Assembly: GCA_950097015.1 (NCBI GenBank)
Contig: CATNEN010000007.1
Location: 3,348,001-3,412,000 of the forward strand
Direction: 5' to 3'
Origin: Macrostomum hystrix
Lineage: Eukaryota > Animalia > Platyhelminthes
DNA length: 64,000 nt
Positions within the stretch are counted from its first letter, which is position 1; the number at the start of each line of letters is the position of its first letter. A program made the translations under genes and the position numbers. This document shows, in pieces, positions 17,892 through 31,500 of this stretch. The notes below the pieces were generated by a model that was not told the origin of the DNA, did no database searches, and saw only the letters and a program-made list of their open reading frames with translations.

Positions 17892-20384
17892 CAGCAAGGT
17901 AAAACACTACTTATACAGAGTCTCAGGGCCTACTAGTAACTCAACAGAGCATGCCTGGCTGCCGCCAGAGAGGGTTGCTGGGGTATGGCCTGGGTAGGGT
18001 GTGGAGCCCTTGATTGGGTTGCCACGATGAGGTGGAGGGTAGGTGGTGACGGCTGGCGCTTTCGGAGTCTGGGACGCATAGGAAAATATTGTTCGCGTGG
18101 AGTGTTGGGCGATTGCATTGTTGGGGGGGGGAGCGGCTAGAGGCGGGAGAGGAAAACCCAGAGGGGAAGAGAGTGAGAGACGGGGAGAGAGAAAGGTGAC
18201 TGCCTGGCATTGTTGGTCGAGAAGCTGCAGACAGATTCGTGTCGGATAGATTGACTTGAATATCCAATGCGGCCAAACTGAGAGTACACGCAATACCACC
18301 ACAATGAGCTGCTCTGGGGGAAGGTAAAAGTGCACAGCAGCTCTCCACGGGCTTAAAAGACAGGCCCAAATGTCAATGAAATGTCAACCTACCATGCTTC
18401 CAAACTGGCATTAGCAACGCTGCTGAATTGATTTACAAATATTACTTGCAAATCAATTAATAATTCAACCAATTGAGACGGCGGCCTTGAAAGCCTTAAG
18501 ACTCCAGGTGTTGGGAATTCCGAGTCTGTACGCTTTTATACTCGCCTAGATACTAATATTGTAGACTGCAGCCCAATTCTTATCTGTGAGCACTGGGGCT
18601 GCTCTGAGCGGCTAGTGGCGGGGTGGGTGCCTCACACATTTTCAGCGCACGGTGTGCTCAGAGTCAAATATTTGCTCAGAATAAATGCCGACCGGGTTTA
18701 ACTGCGCAAATCCTTTGCCCGGTATAGGAGAAAATACTCTAGCCTAATGGGTGCGCGATTCTGTGAGCATTTTACGCATTTATCGGCAATAACTGCGAAC
18801 ATTACACTATACACTATAATAAGAGTAAATTCGTTTCAAACCCTATTAATTAACGCAAATCGTTAATTAACGAAGTTAAAAAACTAAAATTTCCCGGTGC
18901 CTAGCACAATCTGCGTGCATTAATTACATGCAATTCTCAGATAACAAGGCAGATATATTCTGCTGACGACCGCGAAACACTGACTATTAGGCTAGTATGT
19001 GGCCTAATCTGAGCTACCGTGCGCTGCACCGAGTCGCTATCTGCGCCACTCTCGGCGGGTGACAAATTAAATTTTAATCCTCAATAATTAAATACTCGGG
19101 TCAGCGAGTTTGGTTGGCACTTTACAAAATAGAAAACAGCAACAGCACACGCCTCAACTCACCGCAGCCGCAAATGCGTGACCTGCCAGACAGTTCCCAA
19201 GACATTCAGCTGGCTACTAGTGCAGTGTTTGTTTATCTAGACTGGCCCTCTTAACTATTATGAGCTTGATTAACTAGGGATTAAAGGAAACCCTAGAGGA
19301 CTAAGAGGGGCTAGTTGAGCTGAGCTGAGCATGCCAACTCTGTGTGTGTGAGAGCGGAGGCCGCAGAGCATTTTATAGACAGCCAGACAGAGAGAGAGAC
19401 AGAATGAAGAAGTGAGAAGAGAGATGGATGAGAGCAAATACCATTGTGCCGGCCAACGCACAGACCACAGCCAACTCAGCGGGGCGCCGCAGAAGCAGCT
19501 TCCCAAAAGAGGAGCTGATGAATTCCCAGACCCGCTTCAACAGGGACGGGAGCCCGCAGCGGCAGCAGCAATAATTCAAACTGCTCAGTTAATGCTCAAA
19601 AAAATGTATTTTATGAGTTTCAAAAGCTGCAGCAAGCTTGAGTAGCTAGCCATTTCACCAGACAGCGGAGTACAGTTTCATAGCCTCTTATTAAAACCGC
19701 AGTGACGGTACATTTGACCTTTGTACTACAGTAGAGCTGTGAGACGGCTTTGTCTTACAATCCTACAAGTGTGTGTCTGAGCTGCAACAGGTCTATCTGC
19801 CTTGTAATACAAAATAATGATGCCAATTAGCACTAAGGTGCTTTGAATCTACAAGCTGCGAGGCTGTGGGTATAACAAAAACAATTGCGCATAGCTTTCT
19901 ACTGATGTAATTTAACAAATGCATTACCAACGATTGAGTTAATAAACTAAATAATACAATAAAAACTAACTATTTGTATTTCAATTGGTGACTAAGACAA
20001 TGCGTAAATGGGATCATATTCAGTAACAAACGTTCAAGACAAAAACAGATGAAACAGCATTGCTTAAGTTCTGTATATTTCTGTAAAAGCTTGTCACATA
20101 GTTAATAGAATGTGAATAGCCAGAAAAACAAATGCAACATTTCCTTATTCTCAAAAAGTTGATAGTTTTAGGAACAAAGTCGCGAAGGCCAATAAAAGCA
20201 GAAATCAGCACAACCGTCTGATCGAATCTTTTTAAAGAAATTGACTGGCTTCATGAAACTATTTTTTAAAACTAAAAACAACATTTTAAAAGGCAAAGTT
20301 AGGATAAATTTCGGGATCAAAATCAAAAGCATTACTTCCAGATCAGAACTAACACGCGGATGCCACTCCTACGATTCATGATAA

Positions 20385-20730
20385 AATCCTGGGAACTAGG
20401 ATCCAGATTACCGAATTCTGGATAAAGACTCTGGAGCTAAGGATAAAGATCCTGGGATTCAGGATAAAGATCATTGGATTCGGGATAAAGATCATTGGAT
20501 TCGGGATAAAGATCATTGGATTCGGGATAAAGATCATTGGATTCGGGATAAAGATCATTGGATTCGGGATAAAGATCATTGGATTCGGGATAAAGATCAT
20601 TGGATTCGGGATAAAGATCATTGGATTCGGGATAAAGATCATGGGATTCGGGATAAAGATCACGGGATTCAGGATATAAAGATCAAGGGATTCAGGATAA
20701 AGATCAAGGGATTCAGGATAAAGATCCTGG
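20385..20730. repeat. 21-bp minisatellite (ggattcgggataaagatcatt)
   Basis: Tandem copies downstream of the URB1 stop. Confidence 0.95.
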
Positions 20731-20847
20731 GAGTCGAGGAATAACCATATGATTTAGGGACAACTAAATATGTGAAATAGTTAAGGATAGTCGCTACGCT
20801 GACGCGATAGGAAGCCGAATATCTAACGCCTATCTTATCTGCCGCAG

Positions 20848-23800
20848 TCAGGAATCGCCTACAGTCAGCTCAGCCGAGTCGTCCACCTCGGTTGTCCATT
20901 CGCCGACCTGCTGCCGGACGCAATGCAGTTCGGCGCAGTCTGTAGCGGCAGCAAAGGCTGGCAGCTGCAGCAGGCAGCGCATCTGGCCCACAAAGTGGAC
21001 CGGCAGGCTGTCCGCTGGCCGGCAGCCGAGCAGGCAGCGCCACAGCACGCGGACGAGGCGGCGACAGATGGCCAGCTGGCGAGCCTCGGCGTTGCAGACG
21101 ACCCCGGACAGCCAGACAATGAGCTGGTGCCGGTTGACCATGCTGACAGCGGCCGGACGCAGCGAGGCCAGCCGGCAGAGCAAGCGCAGGGTCAGACACT
21201 TGGCAGTGCCGTCTAGAGCCGGGTAGATGGCCAGCAGCGTCTTGACGGCGAAGCTGCGCTCCAGCAGGCGATAGTCTTCCAGATCTCTGGCACCCTGAGC
21301 GAATAGCTGCAGCAGCCACTGGCGTTCAACTCGATGATCGACGTGGTCGGACATAAGGAAGCGCCAGAGCTCCGGGGCTGCGTTCAATGGCAGAGCGGAT
21401 CGGGCGGTCAGGAAGCGCCACAGAAGGCCGTACATCCGCTGCTGCGGCTTTAGCAAGGCCTCGGCGCAACGGGCTAGAAACAGGGCGATCAGGCAGGGCA
21501 GGCGACGATTGGCCGATGTCAGAGTCGACCGGACCACGCCGATGAGGTAGCAGGCCTGATCCCGCTCCGGGAATCGCTGGGACTGGGAATCGCAGCCGCG
21601 GTACAGATTGGCTAGCACAGTCAGGCCTAGCAGGCGGATCCGCTCGGAGTGGCTGGCCAGAGAGGCGATGGCCAGGGACAGGCAGTGGTGCCGGATGGCG
21701 GCGCTGGCCTCCAGGCCGGCTGGCAGCAGGCGGCAGAGCAGCGGCAGCAGCCAGCACGGATCGTACAGGCCGGGTCTGGCCGGCTGCAGCAGCGGCTTTG
21801 GGTGGCTCAGCCAGGCCCGGTCCAGGGGAAAGTGCACCGCGGTGTACAGTACGCGCCTGGTGACAATTTAGTTTTAATAATATAGAATTATTCTTAGTTC
21901 CTAGCCGATGCGTTGCTGATAAGAAAAGTTATACTGCTGTATGATGCACACTACTGAGTACGAGTAGTCAGTAAGAACATGCAAACAGTTATATTATCCC
22001 CACGGTCATTTAAAAAAATAGGACACATTTATACCCACTGTCATTGTGAAAGAAGACAAAATTATCCCCACGGTCATTGTGAAAGCAGACAAAGTTATCA
22101 AACGGTCATTAATTGGGTCATTAAAACATCAAGGGCATTAAAACATTAAGCCTACAATTGCAATTATCTGCTCAGCCTACAGCTGGCGGCCTCACCTGGG
22201 CTCCAGCTGAGCCAGAATGCCGGCCGGTGGCGGCGCGGCAAACAGGCGGCTGCTGAGGTCGGGCTGGAAGCGCCGGCATTCGGCAAGCCGGCCAGACCAG
22301 CAACACTGGCTGAGGTCGCCAGGTAGGGCTCGCCTGAGCTGGTGCACAGCGGCAATGATCAGCTGGTCGCGGCCAGACAGGCTGGCCCCGTAGTGCAGCA
22401 TCAACGCGCCGGACAGTCGGATGGCGAAAGCCGACTCTGGCGGCGCCGATAATCGACGAGCGAGCGAGGCGAGTAGGCGAAGCACGGCGTCCAGCAGTCG
22501 GGGACAGTTTGAAGATACATCCGCGTTGACATTTGACAGCAGAAGGCGACGCAATGCCGGATGGTCCATTGCTAGAGCCAGAACACTGACAATGGCATCG
22601 TCGACATTTTCGTGACCTGGAGTCAGGACACTGGCGCAGCCAGCAGCAGCAGCATCCACTACTAGGCAGACAATCTCTGACTTCGGCTGGAAGCTCTTGC
22701 GGCAAAAGCGCTGCCAGGAGCTCGGCGACAATTGCGTCTCCGCGTCGGGAGAAATCATCTGCTCGGCTGCGGTTCTGCGACGATCGGGCAAGTCGGCAAG
22801 GTCGCAGACGCAGGCCGGAAGCTGGTCGGCGACGACGCCACCGGCTTCAAAATCCTCGTCTGGGTCCTGATCCTCAAATGTGGCGGTTGCAGCGGCAACT
22901 TCGTCGATGTCAATTGCTGCCGGAGCTGCCGCGGTGGTCGTCAGCAGCTTCGGAATGTCGACGCCACCGCCGTCTAATGCGGAAGCAGCAGCGAGCGCTT
23001 TAGCAACCAGAGCCTCGGCCTCGGCATCAGACGCGGCAGCCTCGGCGTATTCCGTTGCCTTGTCAACCAGGCCAAGCGGATCGCCAGCTATGACAGCCTC
23101 GGCGAGTGCTGCGTCAAGGACTGTGGCGTCCCTGCCGCCTTTGCTGTGGAGGCAGATTCGCCAGGCGCGTATAACGAAGGCCAGGCGTTGAGCCAGAAGT
23201 CGCCGGATGCGTCGACAACGCGAACGAACAGCGGCAACAGTGTCGGTAGAGACGCCGGTGTCTGCGAGAGTCAGGCCGGAGGCGAGGTGCGCCTGGACAT
23301 CGCTGTTCGGCAACAGTAGCCCTTTCATAGTGAAACTAGCTGTCTCATCATCCTTAGCAACCATGGCGGCGTCCCTAACAACGGCCGCCAGAGCGATCCT
23401 AGCCGCCTCGGCGTCGCCTTCCTCTTCCGCTTCGCCAGCGTCGCCGTCGTCAACACCCCAGAGAGCGGCGAGGCAGTCGGCCGCGGCCAGCCAGCTGGGT
23501 CCCGGCCGCGGGGGCAACAGCGGCTCCAGTGCCTCGCCGGTTAGCCGGGCCGCCAGCTCCGGGCAGCGTCGGCCAATGCTGGCTGCCAGCCGTCGGTAAC
23601 GCCCGCTGGCCACCAGCCGGCTGGCCAAACAGTTGACCAGCAGGTGGCACAGGAGGGGATTCTCGCCTCGACGAAATAGAATGCCGTCACGCCTGGAGGC
23701 GCCCAAGCCGCGGAGCAGCCGGTAAGCCGCTTCGCGCACAGCCAATGCCGCCTCGCTGACGCTGCTCTCGGTGCCGCCTTCGTCGTCTACCTCGCCGATA

Positions 23801-24934
23801 GTCGAGTCGTCAGCTTTAGCAGCTCCTGGCCGCCTGTGCTGCTGAGCCTGCTGTAGCGGCGCCGAGTAGGCCAGCAGGCGAGCTAGACAGCTCAGCTGCC
23901 GCCTGCCGAACAGGCGGGCCTTCTGCGTCTTACTGACACCGCTGCCCGACGCTAGGAGTCGGTCAGTCAGCGCCGGCAGGAGCAGCAGAAGCGTGGCCGG
24001 CTTGTCCTGGTCCAGGCGCTCCAACAGCTGGCCGGCAAAGTCGGCGCCTCGCTCGAGAAAGGCGCGAACTACAGTACTGCCCGATTTGCCTAGGATAAAA
24101 GTGCATAGTTAATTTAGTTAGGGAATCCTATAAATGAATTTTGAATAGATAGAATAATTGAAGAACGAGGATCAGAAGGAGTTCAGACTAAGGGATCAGT
24201 GCTGGGAGAATGACGATCATAAGCAGTCCTGAATTAGGGATCAGCGATGGGAGAATGAGGATCATAAGCAGTCCTGAATTAGGGATCAGCGATGGGAGAA
24301 TGACAGTTATAAGCAGTGAATTAGGGATCAGCGATGGGAGAATGAGGATCATAAGCAGTCATGAATTGGGGATCAGTGATGAGAGAATGAGTTAGCTAGT
24401 TGGCTAACCTGCTCCAACTAGAAAGGCCACGCCGAGCTGCACGCAGCAATGCCGGATGTCGTCCTGATCGGCCGGATTTCGCCGCCTAGCCAGCGCCTGC
24501 CAGCGTCTGGCGCTGAAGTCGACAGCGTGCAGCAGAGTCTTGGCCGAGGTGGCGTCGCAGCTGGCCATTGCGGCGAGGCAGCGGAGGGCAGACTTGACCA
24601 CCGCGCCATTGTTGGCCGGATCCAGCGCCCGATAGACGCTGCCCAGGTGATCGTTGATCAGCGACTCGACTAAGGCCTGGCAGAGTCGGTTGCTAGCCAA
24701 GCTCTTCCTGGCCAGTGCGGCCAGGCAGTGGGTGGCAACAGTGAACACTACGCGGAGCTCCTGTGGCCGACGATGGCCCTCGTCAGTGGCCAGGTGATTC
24801 AATAGCTGGGAAGGCTCGGCGTTGCCCAGATCGACCAGGTCCTCGATGTGGGAGCTGGCATCGCCGGAGTCGAGATCGGCGCCTAGGGCCGATAGGCGAT
24901 CAAAGTCGCTGCAGATTTCTGACCACTCGTACTT
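20848..24934 (-). CDS. URB1: Nucleolar pre-ribosomal-associated protein 1 (URB1/Npa1); start codon not found in the exon
   Basis: Exons 24934-24409, 24089-22196 and 21856-20848 join in frame (3429 nt). The N-terminal region is Npa1-like (SALRCLAAMASCDATSAKTLLHAVDF...RRRN...DDIRHCCVQLGVAFL, KTQKARLF). The C-terminal region is NopRA1-like (YDPCWLLPLL, RRLPCLIALF, LPLNAAPEL, ERQWLLQL, EDYRLL). Confidence 0.9.
24190..24395. repeat. ~45-bp tandem repeat in the first URB1 intron
   Basis: About 4 copies of gggatcagcgatgggagaatgaggatcataagcagtcctgaatta. Confidence 0.88.
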
Positions 24935-26673
24935 CTGAAGATTATTGGGAGCAGTTATAAACAAAGCTAAAATATAACAAACAAACAATAGGAACACACA
25001 GCAATAAATTTTTTAAATGAAAACTGTTTAAAGAAAAGCATATTATAAAATATTAGTGCACATATATCAACAGTCTAAAACATAGATACTGCATGATCAA
25101 CAGTGTTAAATGCATCTTATACAGCTTACAGAGCTAGAAAATTGGGAGTAATTTTTGTCAGTATACATGCCGGTGTTCATTACATCATTGGGGAGTATTG
25201 GCTATAAGATAATCTTGCATAAGTTTAGACTGAAACAGCCAGTATCTAAAATTGTAGATCTTGGGCTCATTGCAGTGCACAATGACCACACTTTAAAAGA
25301 AAAAAATTTAAGAACTGCAGTTTTTTCATTTTCTATATGCAATTTTAAAGCTTGTAAGTACATAAAAATTAGACAAAAGTTTTGTGAAGCTATTTAATTA
25401 CTTTTTTGCCCAGATTGTCAATTAACTTTATGGTATATTTAAGGAGAACTACTTGCTGAGAATTTTAAAACAAACTTAAGACAGGATGTATCTTAGGAAT
25501 TATATATTTAATCTTTAAAAGCTATGGCTCACATAAATGAACCTAAAGGATACAACCTTGTTGGAATCAGCTATTTATATATCAATTAAAAAGTAAAAAA
25601 TATTAGATTTAAAATAGCCTATTACAGTATTAGGAATTTAGGAAAATAGCCAAGAGGCAAGAAAAGCTAGGCCAAGCTACATCTTAACTTAGATAATGTT
25701 GGGCCTATTTACTTTTTTTGTCTGAATTAGTAGGCCTAATAATAAAACTCCACCAAACTTTAAAGTCTACATTCTATGCCAGTTTTGTTTAATGTAGAGG
25801 GTCCTAGACAAGGGGGTGACAAACTACTCATTTCTATTTGTTAGGAACATGGCAATAACAATAAACAAAAAGCTGCTATTTATACAATTATAGTACAATT
25901 GAGTGAAATTGACCACTTCCACCAAGAACTGATATAAAAAACAATAAAAACTTTTTTATAGGTGAGTACCACGAAGGCTCATAGCACAAGGCTCATATAG
26001 AACAAAGGGTAAAATTCTTGAAATTTGCTTAAAACTGTTTTAATGTTCTAAATGTTGTACCAATTTTATGTTCCTTGTGGCTAAAAGCATATGCTTAAAT
26101 TATTATGAATAGCATTCTAAAAGCTACTAAGACTTAAGGTAAGCATTTTCTGTGAATCAACTCAATACTCAGTTAGCCTAGGCTTGTGGCTAAAGGTAGT
26201 TATCGCCTTATGTACCTAGCCAAAGTTTCAGGAAATTTGGGTCTTGTCTTTTATATGGCGGGATGGGTTGACTCTTAATAAATCGCTTAAAACACAAAGT
26301 AATATAGCCTAATGGCAAGTCAGAGTTACACAAGATATTGTACATATTGTATTGCCATGTTATACAAGACCGGCCTGTTATACAGGACCACTAGACCGGC
26401 CTATAATCTTCTAGTGGCGGCCTTGATGGCTTGATGCTATAGTTTTCCATTTATTGTTGAACACGCTTTTCAAACGTGCTGCTCGCGTGATGCGTTTTTG
26501 TCGTTAAAAATATATTTAAAACAAAAAGCCATGTCGTGACGAATACTTCCATATATATTTTTTTGCTTTTTATATAAATCACTTCATATAACCAATTCTG
26601 CCAACAAAGGCAAGACATATGCAAGGATATATTTTTATTGATTGCTGATATCAACTACTTTTTCATGAGTGGG

Positions 26674-27170
26674 TCTTTCACCGCATTGTTTTCCGCATGG
26701 TTTTCCGCATGGTTTTCCGCACGGTTTTTTTCCGTGTAAAAATAAAAATTTTTTTGTATGGTGTAAAAATTACTGTGAAACTGTAATTTAATTTAATGGA
26801 TGGTATGATATGACCTGGTATAGTATTAATCTTGTATGATGAAGTAGTCTATATGTTAGCATATGACATGATCTGGTATGATATGGTATAATATGGCATA
26901 ATCTGGTATGTTATAGCATGATTTTGTATTATATGGCATGATATGGTATAATATGGCATGTTATGGTATGATATGGCATGATCTGGTAAGATATGACCTA
27001 GTATCATATAATCTTGTATGATATAGTTGTTAGAATCTCTTTCATATGTTTGCTAAAAATGTTACCAAGGATTATTGCAGCACATGAGTGCTTTATTCAA
27101 GTCAGCATGATGCAAAAATACAGGAAAAAAATCATGCGGAAAACCATGCGGAAAACAATGCGGTGAAAGA
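26674..27170. mobile_element. Foldback/MITE-like element 1 (~500 bp)
   Basis: Perfect 38-bp inverted repeat: tctttcaccgcattgttttccgcatggttttccgcatg at 26674, with its reverse complement ending at 27170. It contains an 11-bp sub-repeat. The interior is AT-rich with degenerate atatggtat repeats. No TSD is evident. Confidence 0.7.
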
Positions 27171-27189
27171 TGTATACGTACTTTTTCAC

Positions 27190-27656
27190 CCGTGTTGACA
27201 GAGATAGGGTCTAAGAAACGGTAATCGAACATGCGCGACGGTTGCCTAATGGGCAAATCAGAACATGTTATTTGTTCCGAGAACATGTTCTTTTTAATTC
27301 ATAAGGCTTCGTAATGTAAAATATATATATGGAAAAGATATAAAGAAAAAGCGATGGCCTTTACAGGCCAAAAAAGAAGACATAATGGTAAAGATAACTG
27401 GGGCTTACAACGTCTGTAATTTACTGTAAAGTCTGCAAAATATACATACCAGCATTTAGCCTAAATATGAGCCACCAATATATCTTTTTTTCAACAGCGC
27501 ATATTATCGCGTGTTCAGTACCTAGCGGTATTTAATATACATTAAGTAGCCTTATTAATTTAAAAGAATATGTTCTCGGAACAAAGAACATGTTCGGAGT
27601 TGACTATTAGGCGACCGTCGCGCATGTTCGATGTAGCCTAAGAGTCGTCAACACGG
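27190..27656. mobile_element. Foldback/MITE-like element 2 (~470 bp)
   Basis: Imperfect ~100-bp inverted repeats, 27190-27294 vs 27562-27656 (shared ccgtgttgac, atcgaacatgcgcgacggt.gcctaat, gaacatgtt.tttgttccgagaacat). Confidence 0.7.
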
Positions 27657-28587
27657 CTGACTTTTTACAAATCATCAAAATAAACAAAATACCACCAAAG
27701 TAGTAATATACAACTTCGTAGTACATAATACTTTTACATGCGGATCAGCATAGTTAAATTACTATCTTTATTTTAAGTATGAGAATGGCACATATTTACG
27801 ATGAGAATGAAAATAGACATCGCTTCGCCCTCAACCAGGTCGCCTTTAGTATTTATTTTGGAGCTTGAGACAATAATTAATGTGCTCCAGTGTTGGATAA
27901 CACATTGAACAACAAAAAACGAAAGCATGCTGGCATGACGATTTATTCACAGCTGATTGACCTCGAATAAGTAGCTAATATTCTGTACGATAGCATTCAC
28001 ACATATTGAGCTATTTTTATACGCACAGAATCACATGTTGATAGATAAACCAATAACCACTAGGACTAGACTACTACTACTTCTAGTGTTCCTTAAGATA
28101 AAGTATAAGGTCACCCGGTCAAATCAGTTTTCGAGAGAAGGCTTTTAAGTAGTCGTCGAGTGTTTTATTCCTTTAACGGATAGCAAAATGCGGGGTTTTA
28201 GTGTTCTTAAAACCGGCGAAGAAATTTAAAGGCAGAAGCGATTTTATTTATAACAATAAATAGAGCCAACTTTTTGACAGACTTACGTCGTATAAACAAG
28301 ACAGAATTAAACAAATTTTTCAATGCAAAAAACTTATGCAATCATAGGTACTTTAATTAGAGCGATATAAAAAATATAGATTTATGTCAAGTTTGAAAAA
28401 AACGTAACAATAACTGACATTGCAGACGTTAATTAATAAGCAAACATGCGTTAGACAAAAAAGTTAACATTTTTCATAATTTTAATGAGTTCTTTTATCG
28501 TAATAGATAAACTGGAACTTGAAATTGCAAATGCATTATAACAGCATAGTCAGAATGAAACGGTTCAAGGATTCCAGTTAAAAAGCG

Positions 28588-31500
28588 CTACAGGATAGCA
28601 TACTGACTGTAGACCAACTCTCGAACTCGGAAATAGTCCTCGCTGCAGGCGCCTTCAATCAGCAGCCGGCCGGCCTCCGTTCGTTTGACCGCCACCCGGC
28701 CGTTGACCACCAGGACGCCGCCCTGGAACTCAGCAGTCATGCCGATCTCCTGCAGCCGCTGTTTGACGCCGTGCAGTTTGGGCTCGCCGATGAACACAGT
28801 CTTGTGATCAGGCGGTCGGTCGTTTTTCCACGGGACCAGAGTCGGCTGTTCAGTCGGACCCTCCAGGTGAATGCTGGCGTCAACCCAGGCCAGCTCGTAT
28901 TCTCCCAATGGGAAGAATTGCAGACTGGAGATTAGGGAGTCCTTCACGCGCGCCTGATAGATGTGAGCCTCCTTGGTGACGTCGACCGTGTCGCCGTTGG
29001 CAGGCGTGTGGATTCTCTCGGGCGCCAGACCCATGTTGGTGCGGCAGTACTCGGCCAGGTAGTCGGTGGCCTCCCGACTGCCCATTACTAGCACGGTCTC
29101 GCGAGGCTTCAGCGTTGAGATGATCTTCTTAACAGCTTCGCCGTCCGAGCGACCTTCAAAGTCAATGAAGGCGACGGTGCAACGAATTTCGACGTCGACC
29201 TGTTCAACGATGCACTTCGAGGGCGGCTCCGAGTCGCGAGCGGCGCGTTTTGCTGCCGTAGCGGCGGCCGCTGCGGCTGCGGCAGCAGCGGCGACTAGAG
29301 CAGCCGTGGTACGACCGCGGCCGCCTCCTTCGTCAGCGATGGCCGACGGCGCGAAGAGAGCGTTGAATACGGTTGGATCGACCGGTTCTCCGTAGTCGTC
29401 GAATGTTGGCCTAGAAAAATAAATTTTAACTTAGGACCTGGAAGCTTCGTGAATACAAACTGAGGATCTGAAGGGTTGGTGGTTAAGAACTGAGGATCTG
29501 AAGGGTTGGTGGTTAAGAACTGAGGACCTGAAGGGTTGGTGGTTAAGAACTGAGGACCTGAAGGGTTGGTGGTTAAGAACTGAGGATCTGAAGGGTTGGT
29601 GGTTAAGAACTGAGGACCTGAAGGGTTGGTGGTTAAGAACTGAGGACCTGAAGGGTTGGTGGTTAAGAACTGAGGACCTGAAGGGTTGGTATTTGGAACT
29701 GAGGACCTAAAGGGTTGGTGGTTGGGAACTAAGGATCTAAAGTTTCAGTTTAAAACTCAGAAACAATAGTTTTTGAGTGGCTTAAAGGGCGACACGGGAC
29801 CAGTCGCAGCTGTACCTTGACTCCACCATGGGGTAGACCAGCTGCTGCTGCTGCTGCAGCGGGTGATGATGGATCTGGCTCAACTGGCGCTGCTGATGCT
29901 GGGCGGCGCGTTTCGCAACGCTGGGATTCGGCAGGATGTCGTGCGGAGACGCAGTCAGCATCGCGGAGATCTGACCGATTCCACTGACCCCGATGCCGGC
30001 CCCACCGCCGCCGATGACTCCGAGACCGCCGACGCTGCCGTTCATCGGGTCGTCCTTTTCAAGCTCCTCGTCATCGCTTGACTCGTCGACATTGTCGTCG
30101 ATGTCGGCTAAACTGTCGGCGACGCCGGCGATGGAGGAGTCGACGGCACCAGTCGGTGCTGCCCCATGCGAGCGCTTGGCTCGTTGGAAGGCCTCGAGTT
30201 CGGCGCCCTCCAGGCGAACCTTTCGCTTGACCTCCAATTGTACCTATTGAGTGATGCGCGATTGATTTGTTTATTAAGCTAAAACAGAGATGAGAGTGGG
30301 AAAGTTGCACGACAGGGGGGTACAGGAGAGGGAGAGATAGGAGAGGTAGAGACAGGAGAGAGTGAGGGAGAGACAGGAGAGAGTGAGGTAGAGACAGGAG
30401 AGAGTGAGGTAGAGACAGGAGAGAGTGAGGTAGAGACAGGAGAGAGTGAGGTGGAAACAGGAGTGGGTGATGGAAGTCACCCTGTAAAAAATTCGGCTGC
30501 TTCTTCGGCGGGTTTTTGTGCAAAATAGGAGTGGAATCTACCAAAATCCCCCCTATCTCGCAAGAGTTAAAGAAACCACCCAGGAAACCGCTGAAGAATC
30601 ACCCAAGCCAGTGGCCCATGGGACAACCAGAGAATTATTTACGGGCGATTCCTCTGCGTTTTCTGAGCATGGAATCTTCCGAACTGGAGGATTCTTTGGG
30701 TGATTCCATTTCGCCACCAAGAAGCACCGAGAAAACGCCCAGTTGGGTAGATTCTAAGCATGGAATCATCCGATTGGTATGTTTCCAGCGTTCGGCTGTT
30801 TCTTTTTCTGGAAACACCGCAGATTCCAACTGGAATCACCCAAAGAAACATCCCTATTTTTTAGCGGGCAAATCCAGACCCTTTGATACAGCACAGGTAG
30901 ATGCAAAGTGGACTCACCTGTCGCACATTCTTATTATCGATGAGGTAGCGGGCAAGACTGCCCGGCACGCTGCGCTGCGTCAATATAATGGCGTTATTCT
31001 CAGCGCCGGCCCACTGTTGAAACAGCTGCCTGGTGAAGCCCCAGTCCAAGTCGGCCTGCGAGGCTAGAACTACGCGCGGCTCGCGCACTCTGGCCAAATC
31101 CTGGTTAGAGTTTAATGTTCAAGTCATATTACTTTCAGTAGGTGAAGTTGGCAGCATTTCTTAACTCACCTGCAGACTGTGACAAACGTGAAGATAGCGA
31201 AAATTGAACGGATTATCGCGACTCAATTCGAACTGCTTAGTGACCCGATCGCTCATCCATTCCACCTGAGACTTGGCGTGCTCCACCACATTGTGAGCCA
31301 CGCAGTTGAGCAAGGCCAGGCTGTAGGCCATGAGACCGGATTGCTGATTCTGCCAGAGCTGCTCAAGCAGGTGAGTGAGCTCAAGACAGCGGCCGGCTGT
31401 GTCCGTGGCAATCAGCACATTGCCGCCGTCGCGCAAAGTGCCAAGAATGGACGTCATGAGCTGCTCGTCGCGAGCTCGACGCCGGCGCTGATTGTACAGC

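What the first reader, a model, noticed from the sequence alone, without database searches (positions are those of the whole stretch)
24900..25000. URB1 may take its start codon from the spliced leader's terminal AUG
Seen: the first recognisable URB1 exon opens at a T-rich acceptor (…caataatcttcag|AAG TAC GAG TGG, 24934) in phase 0. It has no in-frame ATG until about 120 codons later, inside the conserved Npa1 domain. The track's start at 24997 is a GTG in intron-like sequence. I found no coding-like upstream exon in the AT-rich, MITE-filled 3.6 kb up to the CPSF2 stop. Established: flatworm SL exons end in AUG, which can act as the initiator Met. Inference: the mature mRNA is SL-AUG-AAG-TAC..., so an essential ribosome-biogenesis gene would be strictly dependent on trans-splicing.
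Basis: partly seen in the sequence, partly recalled or inferred. Interest (0 to 1): 0.75.

Follow-up and report, generated by a model that had tools for sequence, protein, structure and literature searches.

The report
Spliced leader supplies URB1 start codon
In this Macrostomum flatworm the ribosome-assembly gene URB1 has no start codon of its own, and RNA assemblies show the AUG-ending trans-spliced leader joined in frame directly before its first codon; this is a well-supported new example of a mechanism already known in flatworms.

Summary
URB1 lies on the minus strand. Its first exon (24409-24934) opens at ...cttcag|AAG TAC GAG TGG. The frame has no genomic ATG before codon 123, which is inside the Npa1 domain. 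Upstream, the frame closes at a TAA (25013-25015) with no ATG in between. The 3.65 kb up to the CPSF2 stop averages 33% GC, carries MITE-like repeats and has no coding-like island.

In three runs of one study, a spliced contig (intron 24090-24408 removed) ends at the acceptor and continues with 24 non-genomic letters. With the shared G, these give CTGCGAAGACTCAATTTATTGCATG|AAGTACGAG. That is the exact 3' end of the published Macrostomum spliced leader, which has no match in the window. Its AUG is in frame, giving M-K-Y-E-W.

Use of that AUG by ribosomes is inferred. Codon-position GC shows coding from the exon's first base, and two out-of-frame AUGs precede the only internal in-frame one. Strict dependence on trans-splicing is plausible but not proven, because contigs cannot exclude rare isoforms or a second gene copy.

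The mechanism is known (Cheng et al. 2006). This scan has already confirmed it for CHMP6, NDUFA5, SFMBT and PPP2R3C elsewhere in this genome. This is a new member of a known kind, of modest interest.

The parts
24935..24937 (-). Trans-splice acceptor cag (AG at 24936-24935), preceded by a pyrimidine-rich tract
   Evidence: Sequence. RNA contigs of X2, X3 and X4 leave the genome here and continue with spliced-leader letters (tables 7 and 8).
24409..24934 (-). URB1 exon 1 (526 nt). It codes from its first base (K-Y-E-W...), has no initiator of its own, and holds Npa1 domain profile positions 14-140.
   Evidence: Codons 1-53 have GC3 0.75 and GC2 0.40, like the rest of the exon.
24566..24568 (-). 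First in-frame genomic ATG (codon 123), inside the Npa1 domain
24859..24861 (-). First genomic ATG of exon 1. It is out of frame and opens a 20-codon ORF. A second out-of-frame ATG lies at 24609.
25013..25015 (-). In-frame TAA in the outron, 27 codons upstream of the exon, with no ATG between it and the acceptor
24090..24408 (-). URB1 intron 1 (319 nt, GT..AG), removed in the RNA contigs
   Evidence: table 5: the joint 24088/24408 (cut +1) appears in X2, X3 and X4.
22196..24089 (-). URB1 exon 2, holding Npa1 profile positions 146-330
   Evidence: The reading phase is continuous with exon 1.
20848..21856 (-). URB1 exon 3 with a complete NopRA1 domain; stop TGA at 20850-20848
   Evidence: (PF16201, E 1.9e-38).
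24938..28444 (-). Outron and intergenic stretch. It is AT-rich and holds MITE-like repeats. No URB1-linked RNA contig and no coding-like island were found.
28588..29094 (-). Last coding stretch of the upstream same-strand gene CPSF2 (CPSF100_C domain); stop at 28588-28590. RNA contigs reach down to about 28445.

Best explanation
URB1 pre-mRNA is SL trans-spliced at the AG acceptor 24936-24935. The Macrostomum spliced leader, which ends in ...UUGCAUG, is joined directly to AAG at 24934. The leader's terminal AUG becomes codon 1 of a protein of about 1143 residues that starts M-K-Y-E-W and carries Npa1 and NopRA1 domains. The genome offers no other in-frame initiator ahead of the conserved domain, so the full-length protein can only be made from trans-spliced mRNA. 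Shown here: the junction, its frame, and the lack of a genomic ATG. Inferred: that ribosomes initiate at the SL AUG, and that no other isoform or gene copy bypasses it.
For:: in X2, X3 and X4 one contig per run is spliced over intron 1 and ends at 24935 with the loose end ATGCAATAAATTGAGTCTTCGCAG on the + strand. In sense this reads CTGCGAAGACTCAATTTATTGCAT, followed by G and then AAGTACGAG; these 25 nt are identical to the 3' end of the published SL of M. lignano, M. cliftonense and M. hystrix; the 25-mer has no match in the window at up to 3 mismatches, so it is not a nearby cis exon; the SL ATG is in frame. The first in-frame genomic ATG is codon 123, and two out-of-frame ATGs precede it. 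An upstream in-frame TAA has no ATG after it; the Npa1 domain starts at exon residue 54 and continues into exon 2; codons 1-53 show coding-type GC periodicity (GC3 0.75), and the other two frames carry stops; the 3.65-kb upstream stretch has no coding-like island. Literature: all reported flatworm SLs end in AUG, and in Schistosoma mansoni more than 40 cDNAs require that AUG for initiation (Cheng et al. 2006, as cited in PMC9851317 and PMC12582326).
Against: All three supporting runs belong to one study and are assemblies, not raw reads, so minor isoforms would be dropped. The fourth run (X1, another study) covers exon 1 only internally and says nothing about the 5' end. No protein-level or ribosome-profiling evidence shows that the AUG is used. 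No orthologue N-terminus could be recovered for comparison. The rest of the genome was not searched for a second URB1 copy.
Confidence: 0.85

Rival explanations
1. A cis-spliced upstream exon, coding or 5'-UTR with an ATG, is joined to the same acceptor in some or most transcripts. The SL form would then be only one isoform.
For: Contig assemblies drop rare variants (caveat stated). Flatworm acceptors can be shared between cis- and trans-splicing (PMC12582326).
Against: No contig in any of the four runs links 24934 to upstream sequence. The only upstream contig pieces (27062-27659) have 3-8 mismatches, run at higher depth than URB1 (15.8-56 against 7-13 for the main pieces), have loose ends on both sides, and fall on inverted-repeat arms, so they are copies of repeats from elsewhere. 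No 90-nt window exceeds 50% GC, against 61-65% in the exons.
Confidence: 0.07
2. The SL is added, but translation starts at the internal in-frame Met123. The first 122 codons would then be 5' UTR.
For: The SL AUG has a U at -3, which is not an optimal context (seen in the sequence; this is inference).
Against: Met123 lies inside the Npa1 domain, which begins at residue 54. Codons 1-53 show coding periodicity, and only this frame is open. Two out-of-frame AUGs (24861, 24609) would intercept scanning ribosomes first. The M. lignano orthologue fragment aligns from residue 78 onward at 78% identity.
Confidence: 0.05
3. The SL letters on the contigs are an assembly chimera caused by shared k-mers, not a real junction.
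For: All three contigs stop after the same 25 SL letters. That is a de Bruijn graph effect: the graph branches where other SL-bearing mRNAs share the word (my inference).
Against: Three separately assembled runs give the same junction. It sits exactly at a canonical AG acceptor with a pyrimidine tract, at the sharp 30% to 63% GC boundary, and in frame.
Confidence: 0.03

Closest known systems
Flatworm mRNAs that take their initiator Met from the SL 3'-terminal AUG (Cheng, Cohen, Ndegwa and Davis 2006, J Biol Chem 281:733; Schistosoma mansoni)
   Same: The SL ends in AUG and is joined at an AG acceptor in frame with a conserved ORF that has no initiator of its own.
   Different: The organism is a free-living macrostomid and the gene is URB1. 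Translation from the SL AUG was tested experimentally in schistosomes but not here.
Macrostomum SL trans-splicing (35-43 nt SL; 20-30% of genes; PMC8629364, PMC10468722)
   Same: The SL 3' end has the identical sequence. The target is a conserved housekeeping gene, the class reported as enriched among SL targets in M. lignano.
   Different: Those papers catalogue the sites. In the passages I read they do not single out genes that depend on the SL for their start codon.
Other SL-AUG cases confirmed by this scan in the same genome (CHMP6, NDUFA5, SFMBT, PPP2R3C)
   Same: The mechanism and the kind of RNA-assembly evidence are the same.
   Different: The locus and gene differ. Those reports are AI notes that I did not re-test.
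URB1/Npa1 (nucleolar pre-60S assembly factor; Pfam Npa1 PF11707 and NopRA1 PF16201)
   Same: Both signature domains are present in the usual order.
   Different: The three-exon model gives about 1143 residues, roughly half the length I recall for human URB1 (my own knowledge, not checked here).

Membership tests
SL-AUG-initiated flatworm mRNA (Cheng et al. 2006 class) | The spliced leader is joined to the mRNA at a canonical AG acceptor. | tested here: met
   contigs of three runs carry 25 nt of SL at 24934. The acceptor is cag|.
SL-AUG-initiated flatworm mRNA (Cheng et al. 2006 class) | The SL exon ends in AUG. | tested here: met
   The junction reads ...TTGCATG|AAG. The published SLs of M. 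hystrix, M. cliftonense and M. lignano end in GCATG.
SL-AUG-initiated flatworm mRNA (Cheng et al. 2006 class) | The SL AUG is in frame with the conserved ORF, with no stop in between. | tested here: met
   ATG AAG TAC GAG... translates as MKYEWSEICS and runs into the Npa1 domain.
SL-AUG-initiated flatworm mRNA (Cheng et al. 2006 class) | The mature mRNA has no genomic in-frame AUG ahead of the conserved region. | tested here: met
   the first in-frame ATG is codon 123, inside the domain, and two out-of-frame ATGs precede it.
SL-AUG-initiated flatworm mRNA (Cheng et al. 2006 class) | Translation actually initiates at the SL AUG. | not testable with these tools
   This needs ribosome profiling, N-terminal proteomics or a reporter assay. 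Coding periodicity from codon 1 is only indirect support.
URB1/Npa1 family | N-terminal Npa1 domain (PF11707) | tested here: met
   Exon 1 gives E 8.5e-9 over profile positions 14-140. Exon 2 gives E 2.4e-11 over profile positions 146-330.
URB1/Npa1 family | NopRA1 domain (PF16201) | tested here: met
   Exon 3 gives E 1.9e-38 over profile positions 1-199 of 199.
URB1/Npa1 family | A role in early pre-60S ribosome assembly | not testable with these tools
   Inferred from homology only.

The most novel reading that the evidence does not exclude
URB1 is single-copy and has no bypass isoform, so production of this 60S-assembly factor is obligatorily coupled to SL trans-splicing. If so, it would belong to a conserved set of housekeeping and stem-cell genes in macrostomids whose translation is gated by SL supply, making trans-splicing a control point for ribosome biogenesis.
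Probability: 0.12. Interest if true: 0.5.

Novelty: new member of a known kind. Interest (0 to 1): 0.3.

Why it matters
The finding gives the correct start (M-K-Y-E-W) for a gene that ORF-based and many automatic annotations will truncate or mis-start. The mechanical track starts it at a GTG in the outron, and the M. lignano UniProt model is an N-terminal fragment. It adds an essential ribosome-biogenesis factor to the list of flatworm genes whose initiator codon is not in the gene but in the SL RNA. That is useful for annotation pipelines and for transgene or knock-in design in Macrostomum. It is not a new mechanism.

Tried and rejected
- Rfam scan of the whole window: no match and no SL RNA gene here.
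- Word-based protein search with exon 1 (175 aa): no hit in the allowed length range.
- The same search with exon 2 found only an N-terminally truncated M. lignano model (A0A1I8IJ79, P0001) and one Logan fragment (P0002). Neither reaches the N-terminus.
- The contig carrying P0002 (L001) starts in an intron, so it says nothing about the 5' end.
- P0001 is not on record in the contig collection.
- PDB sequence search with exon 1: nothing significant.
- Earlier-findings look-ups by sequence and by the words URB1/Npa1: blank.
- I did not run the large representative search, because the protein's identity was not in question.
- I did not search the joined three-exon protein with any tool. Exons were searched one by one by reference.

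Full report
**Orientation.** The feature is on the minus strand. Read in sense, the sequence is ...ttgtttataactgctcccaataatcttcag|AAG TAC GAG TGG TCA GAA... The AG is at 24936-24935 and the first exon base is at 24934.

**Gene identity**
- The exon translates as KYEWSEICSDFDRLSALGADL... and stays open to the donor at 24409|gt.
- Pfam places the Npa1 domain (PF11707) on exon residues 54-172, profile positions 14-140, E 8.5e-9.
- The next open stretch continues the same domain at profile positions 146-330 (E 2.4e-11).
- A third stretch holds a complete NopRA1 domain (PF16201, E 1.9e-38).
- An M. lignano protein fragment (UniRef A0A1I8IJ79, P0001) aligns collinearly to all three stretches.
- The splice sites were read from the sequence. 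They give a three-exon model of about 1143 codons once the leader's Met is counted:

| Part | Coordinates |
|---|---|
| Exon 1 | 24409-24934 |
| Exon 2 | 22196-24089 |
| Exon 3 | 20848-21856 (stop TGA at 20850-20848) |

- So the gene is URB1/Npa1.
- The upstream gene on the same strand ends in a CPSF100_C domain, with its stop at 28588-28590.

**Checking the observation**
- Every element holds.
- The first in-frame genomic ATG is codon 123 (24568), inside the Npa1 domain.
- Two out-of-frame ATGs precede it. One at 24861 opens a 20-codon ORF and one at 24609 opens a 63-codon ORF.
- Going upstream from the acceptor, the frame meets TAA at 25015-25013 without any ATG.
- The ORF track's GTG at 24997 lies in sequence that is 30% GC.
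- The 3653 nt up to the CPSF2 stop average 33% GC. No 90-nt window exceeds 50%, while the exons are 61-65%.
- This stretch contains MITE-like inverted repeats and a 10-nt tandem array. One repeat, at 26674-27172, has 43-nt arms that are 98% complementary. The other, at 27224-27632, has 104-nt arms that are 87% complementary.

**RNA evidence**
- The run search gave four runs of one study that hold the exon, and one run of another study.
- I laid contigs of X2, X3, X4 and X1 on 23300-29200.
- In X2, X3 and X4 one contig per run skips 24090-24408 (319 nt, GT..AG in sense). These contigs are therefore RNA-derived.
- Each aligns up to 24935 and then carries 24 letters that lie on nothing in the stretch: + strand ATGCAATAAATTGAGTCTTCGCAG, which in sense is CTGCGAAGACTCAATTTATTGCAT.
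- The next contig letter is a G that happens to match the acceptor's G at 24935. By the AG rule that genomic G belongs to the outron, so the G in the mRNA comes from the leader.
- The mRNA therefore reads CTGCGAAGACTCAATTTATTGCATG|AAGTACGAGTGG.
- These 25 nt are identical to the 3' end of the 35-nt M. lignano SL (PMC8629364). They are also identical to the SLs assembled for M. hystrix and M. cliftonense (PMC10468722, supplementary Table S3).
- The 25-mer has no match in the window at up to 3 mismatches. It is not a nearby cis exon, so the junction is a trans-splice.
- All three contigs stop after the same 25 SL letters. That is what a k-mer assembly does where thousands of SL-bearing mRNAs share the word (my inference). 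It is not the true 5' end.

**No sign of an upstream exon**
- No contig covers 24936-27060.
- The pieces at 27062-27659 carry 3-8 mismatches. Their depth is mostly higher than URB1's (15.8-56 for the main pieces, against 7-13). They have loose ends on both sides and coincide with the inverted-repeat arms.
- They are therefore transcripts of repeat copies from elsewhere.
- CPSF2 contigs end near 28445, about 140 nt past its stop.

**Is the SL AUG the initiator?**
- It is in frame and gives MKYEWSEICS....
- Codons 1-53, which lie before the recognisable domain, have GC1/2/3 of 0.66/0.40/0.75. The rest of the exon has 0.68/0.50/0.76.
- The other two frames carry stops there. The exon therefore looks coding from its first base, in exactly the frame the leader's AUG sets.
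- Without that AUG, a scanning ribosome would meet two out-of-frame AUGs before Met123, and a start at Met123 would delete a third of the Npa1 domain.
- Established knowledge: all reported flatworm SLs end in AUG. In S. mansoni the AUG is in frame in 28% of trans-spliced transcripts, and more than 40 cDNAs need it for initiation. This is from Cheng et al. 2006, which I read only through its citations in PMC9851317 and PMC12582326.
- Actual initiation at this AUG on URB1 remains inference.

**Strict dependence**
- The genome offers no contiguous initiator, and no cis exon was seen, so full-length URB1 should require trans-splicing.
- Three things remain open:
  - Contigs cannot exclude rare isoforms.
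  - All junction evidence comes from one study.
  - I could not search the rest of the genome for a second copy.
- Attempts to recover orthologue N-termini failed, so conservation of the arrangement across the genus is untested.

**Species**
- Earlier notes of this scan name the genome as Macrostomum hystrix.
- The SL match is consistent with that.
- The M. lignano orthologue is only 47-79% identical, so the window is not M. lignano.
- I did not verify the species independently.

**Comparison and novelty**
- The mechanism is the known flatworm SL-AUG initiation.
- No paper in the library links URB1 with a spliced leader in flatworms.
- The scan has already confirmed the same mechanism on other DNA of this genome: CHMP6, NDUFA5, SFMBT and PPP2R3C. 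I did not re-test those reports.
- This is therefore a new member of a known kind, mainly of value for annotation.

- The joined three-exon protein was never sent to a search tool. Exons were searched separately by reference.

Noticed in passing
window 26674-27172 and 27224-27632: Two MITE-like elements lie in the URB1 outron. One has 43-nt terminal inverted repeats (98% complementary) built from CCGCATGGTTTT-type units and encloses a 10-nt tandem array at about 26800-27044. The other has 104-nt arms (87% complementary). RNA contigs with mismatches, mostly at higher depth than URB1, map to their arms, so copies elsewhere are transcribed.
   Followed up: partly
window 24090-24408 (URB1 intron 1): The intron consists largely of a tandem repeat of roughly 36-45 nt. 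It shows up as reiterated ...ILPSLIPNSGLLMI... in the mechanical translation.
   Followed up: no
window 20379-20753 (just 3' of the URB1 stop): A tandem array of units of about 18-20 nt (gatctttatcc(t/c)gaatccc...) appears in translation as reiterated DLYPES. It may lie in the URB1 3' UTR.
   Followed up: no
window 20848-24934: The URB1 model is only about 1143 residues in three exons, carrying Npa1 and NopRA1. This is about half the length I recall for vertebrate URB1, and the stop comes less than 90 residues after the NopRA1 domain. The middle of exon 2 is only 47% identical to M. lignano, while exons 1 and 3 are about 78%.
   Followed up: partly
L001:1-192 (Logan contig of SRR31628394): A related flatworm's URB1 contig has an intron and acceptor (…ccccatcccag|GCACTGGTGGAA) at a position that is uninterrupted inside exon 1 of the window, at about residue 88. 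This is an intron presence/absence difference between species.
   Followed up: no
P0001 (UniRef A0A1I8IJ79, M. lignano): The public M. lignano URB1 model is an 850-residue fragment that lacks the first 77 or so residues and is named 'DUF2428 domain-containing protein'. That would fit an annotation pipeline failing to find a genomic start codon.
   Followed up: no
window 28445-29094 and 24934: CPSF2 and URB1 lie on the same strand, about 3.5 kb apart. URB1 is SL trans-spliced. The contigs cannot show whether the outron is transcribed from its own promoter or by read-through from CPSF2 (an operon-like arrangement with an unusually long spacer).
   Followed up: no
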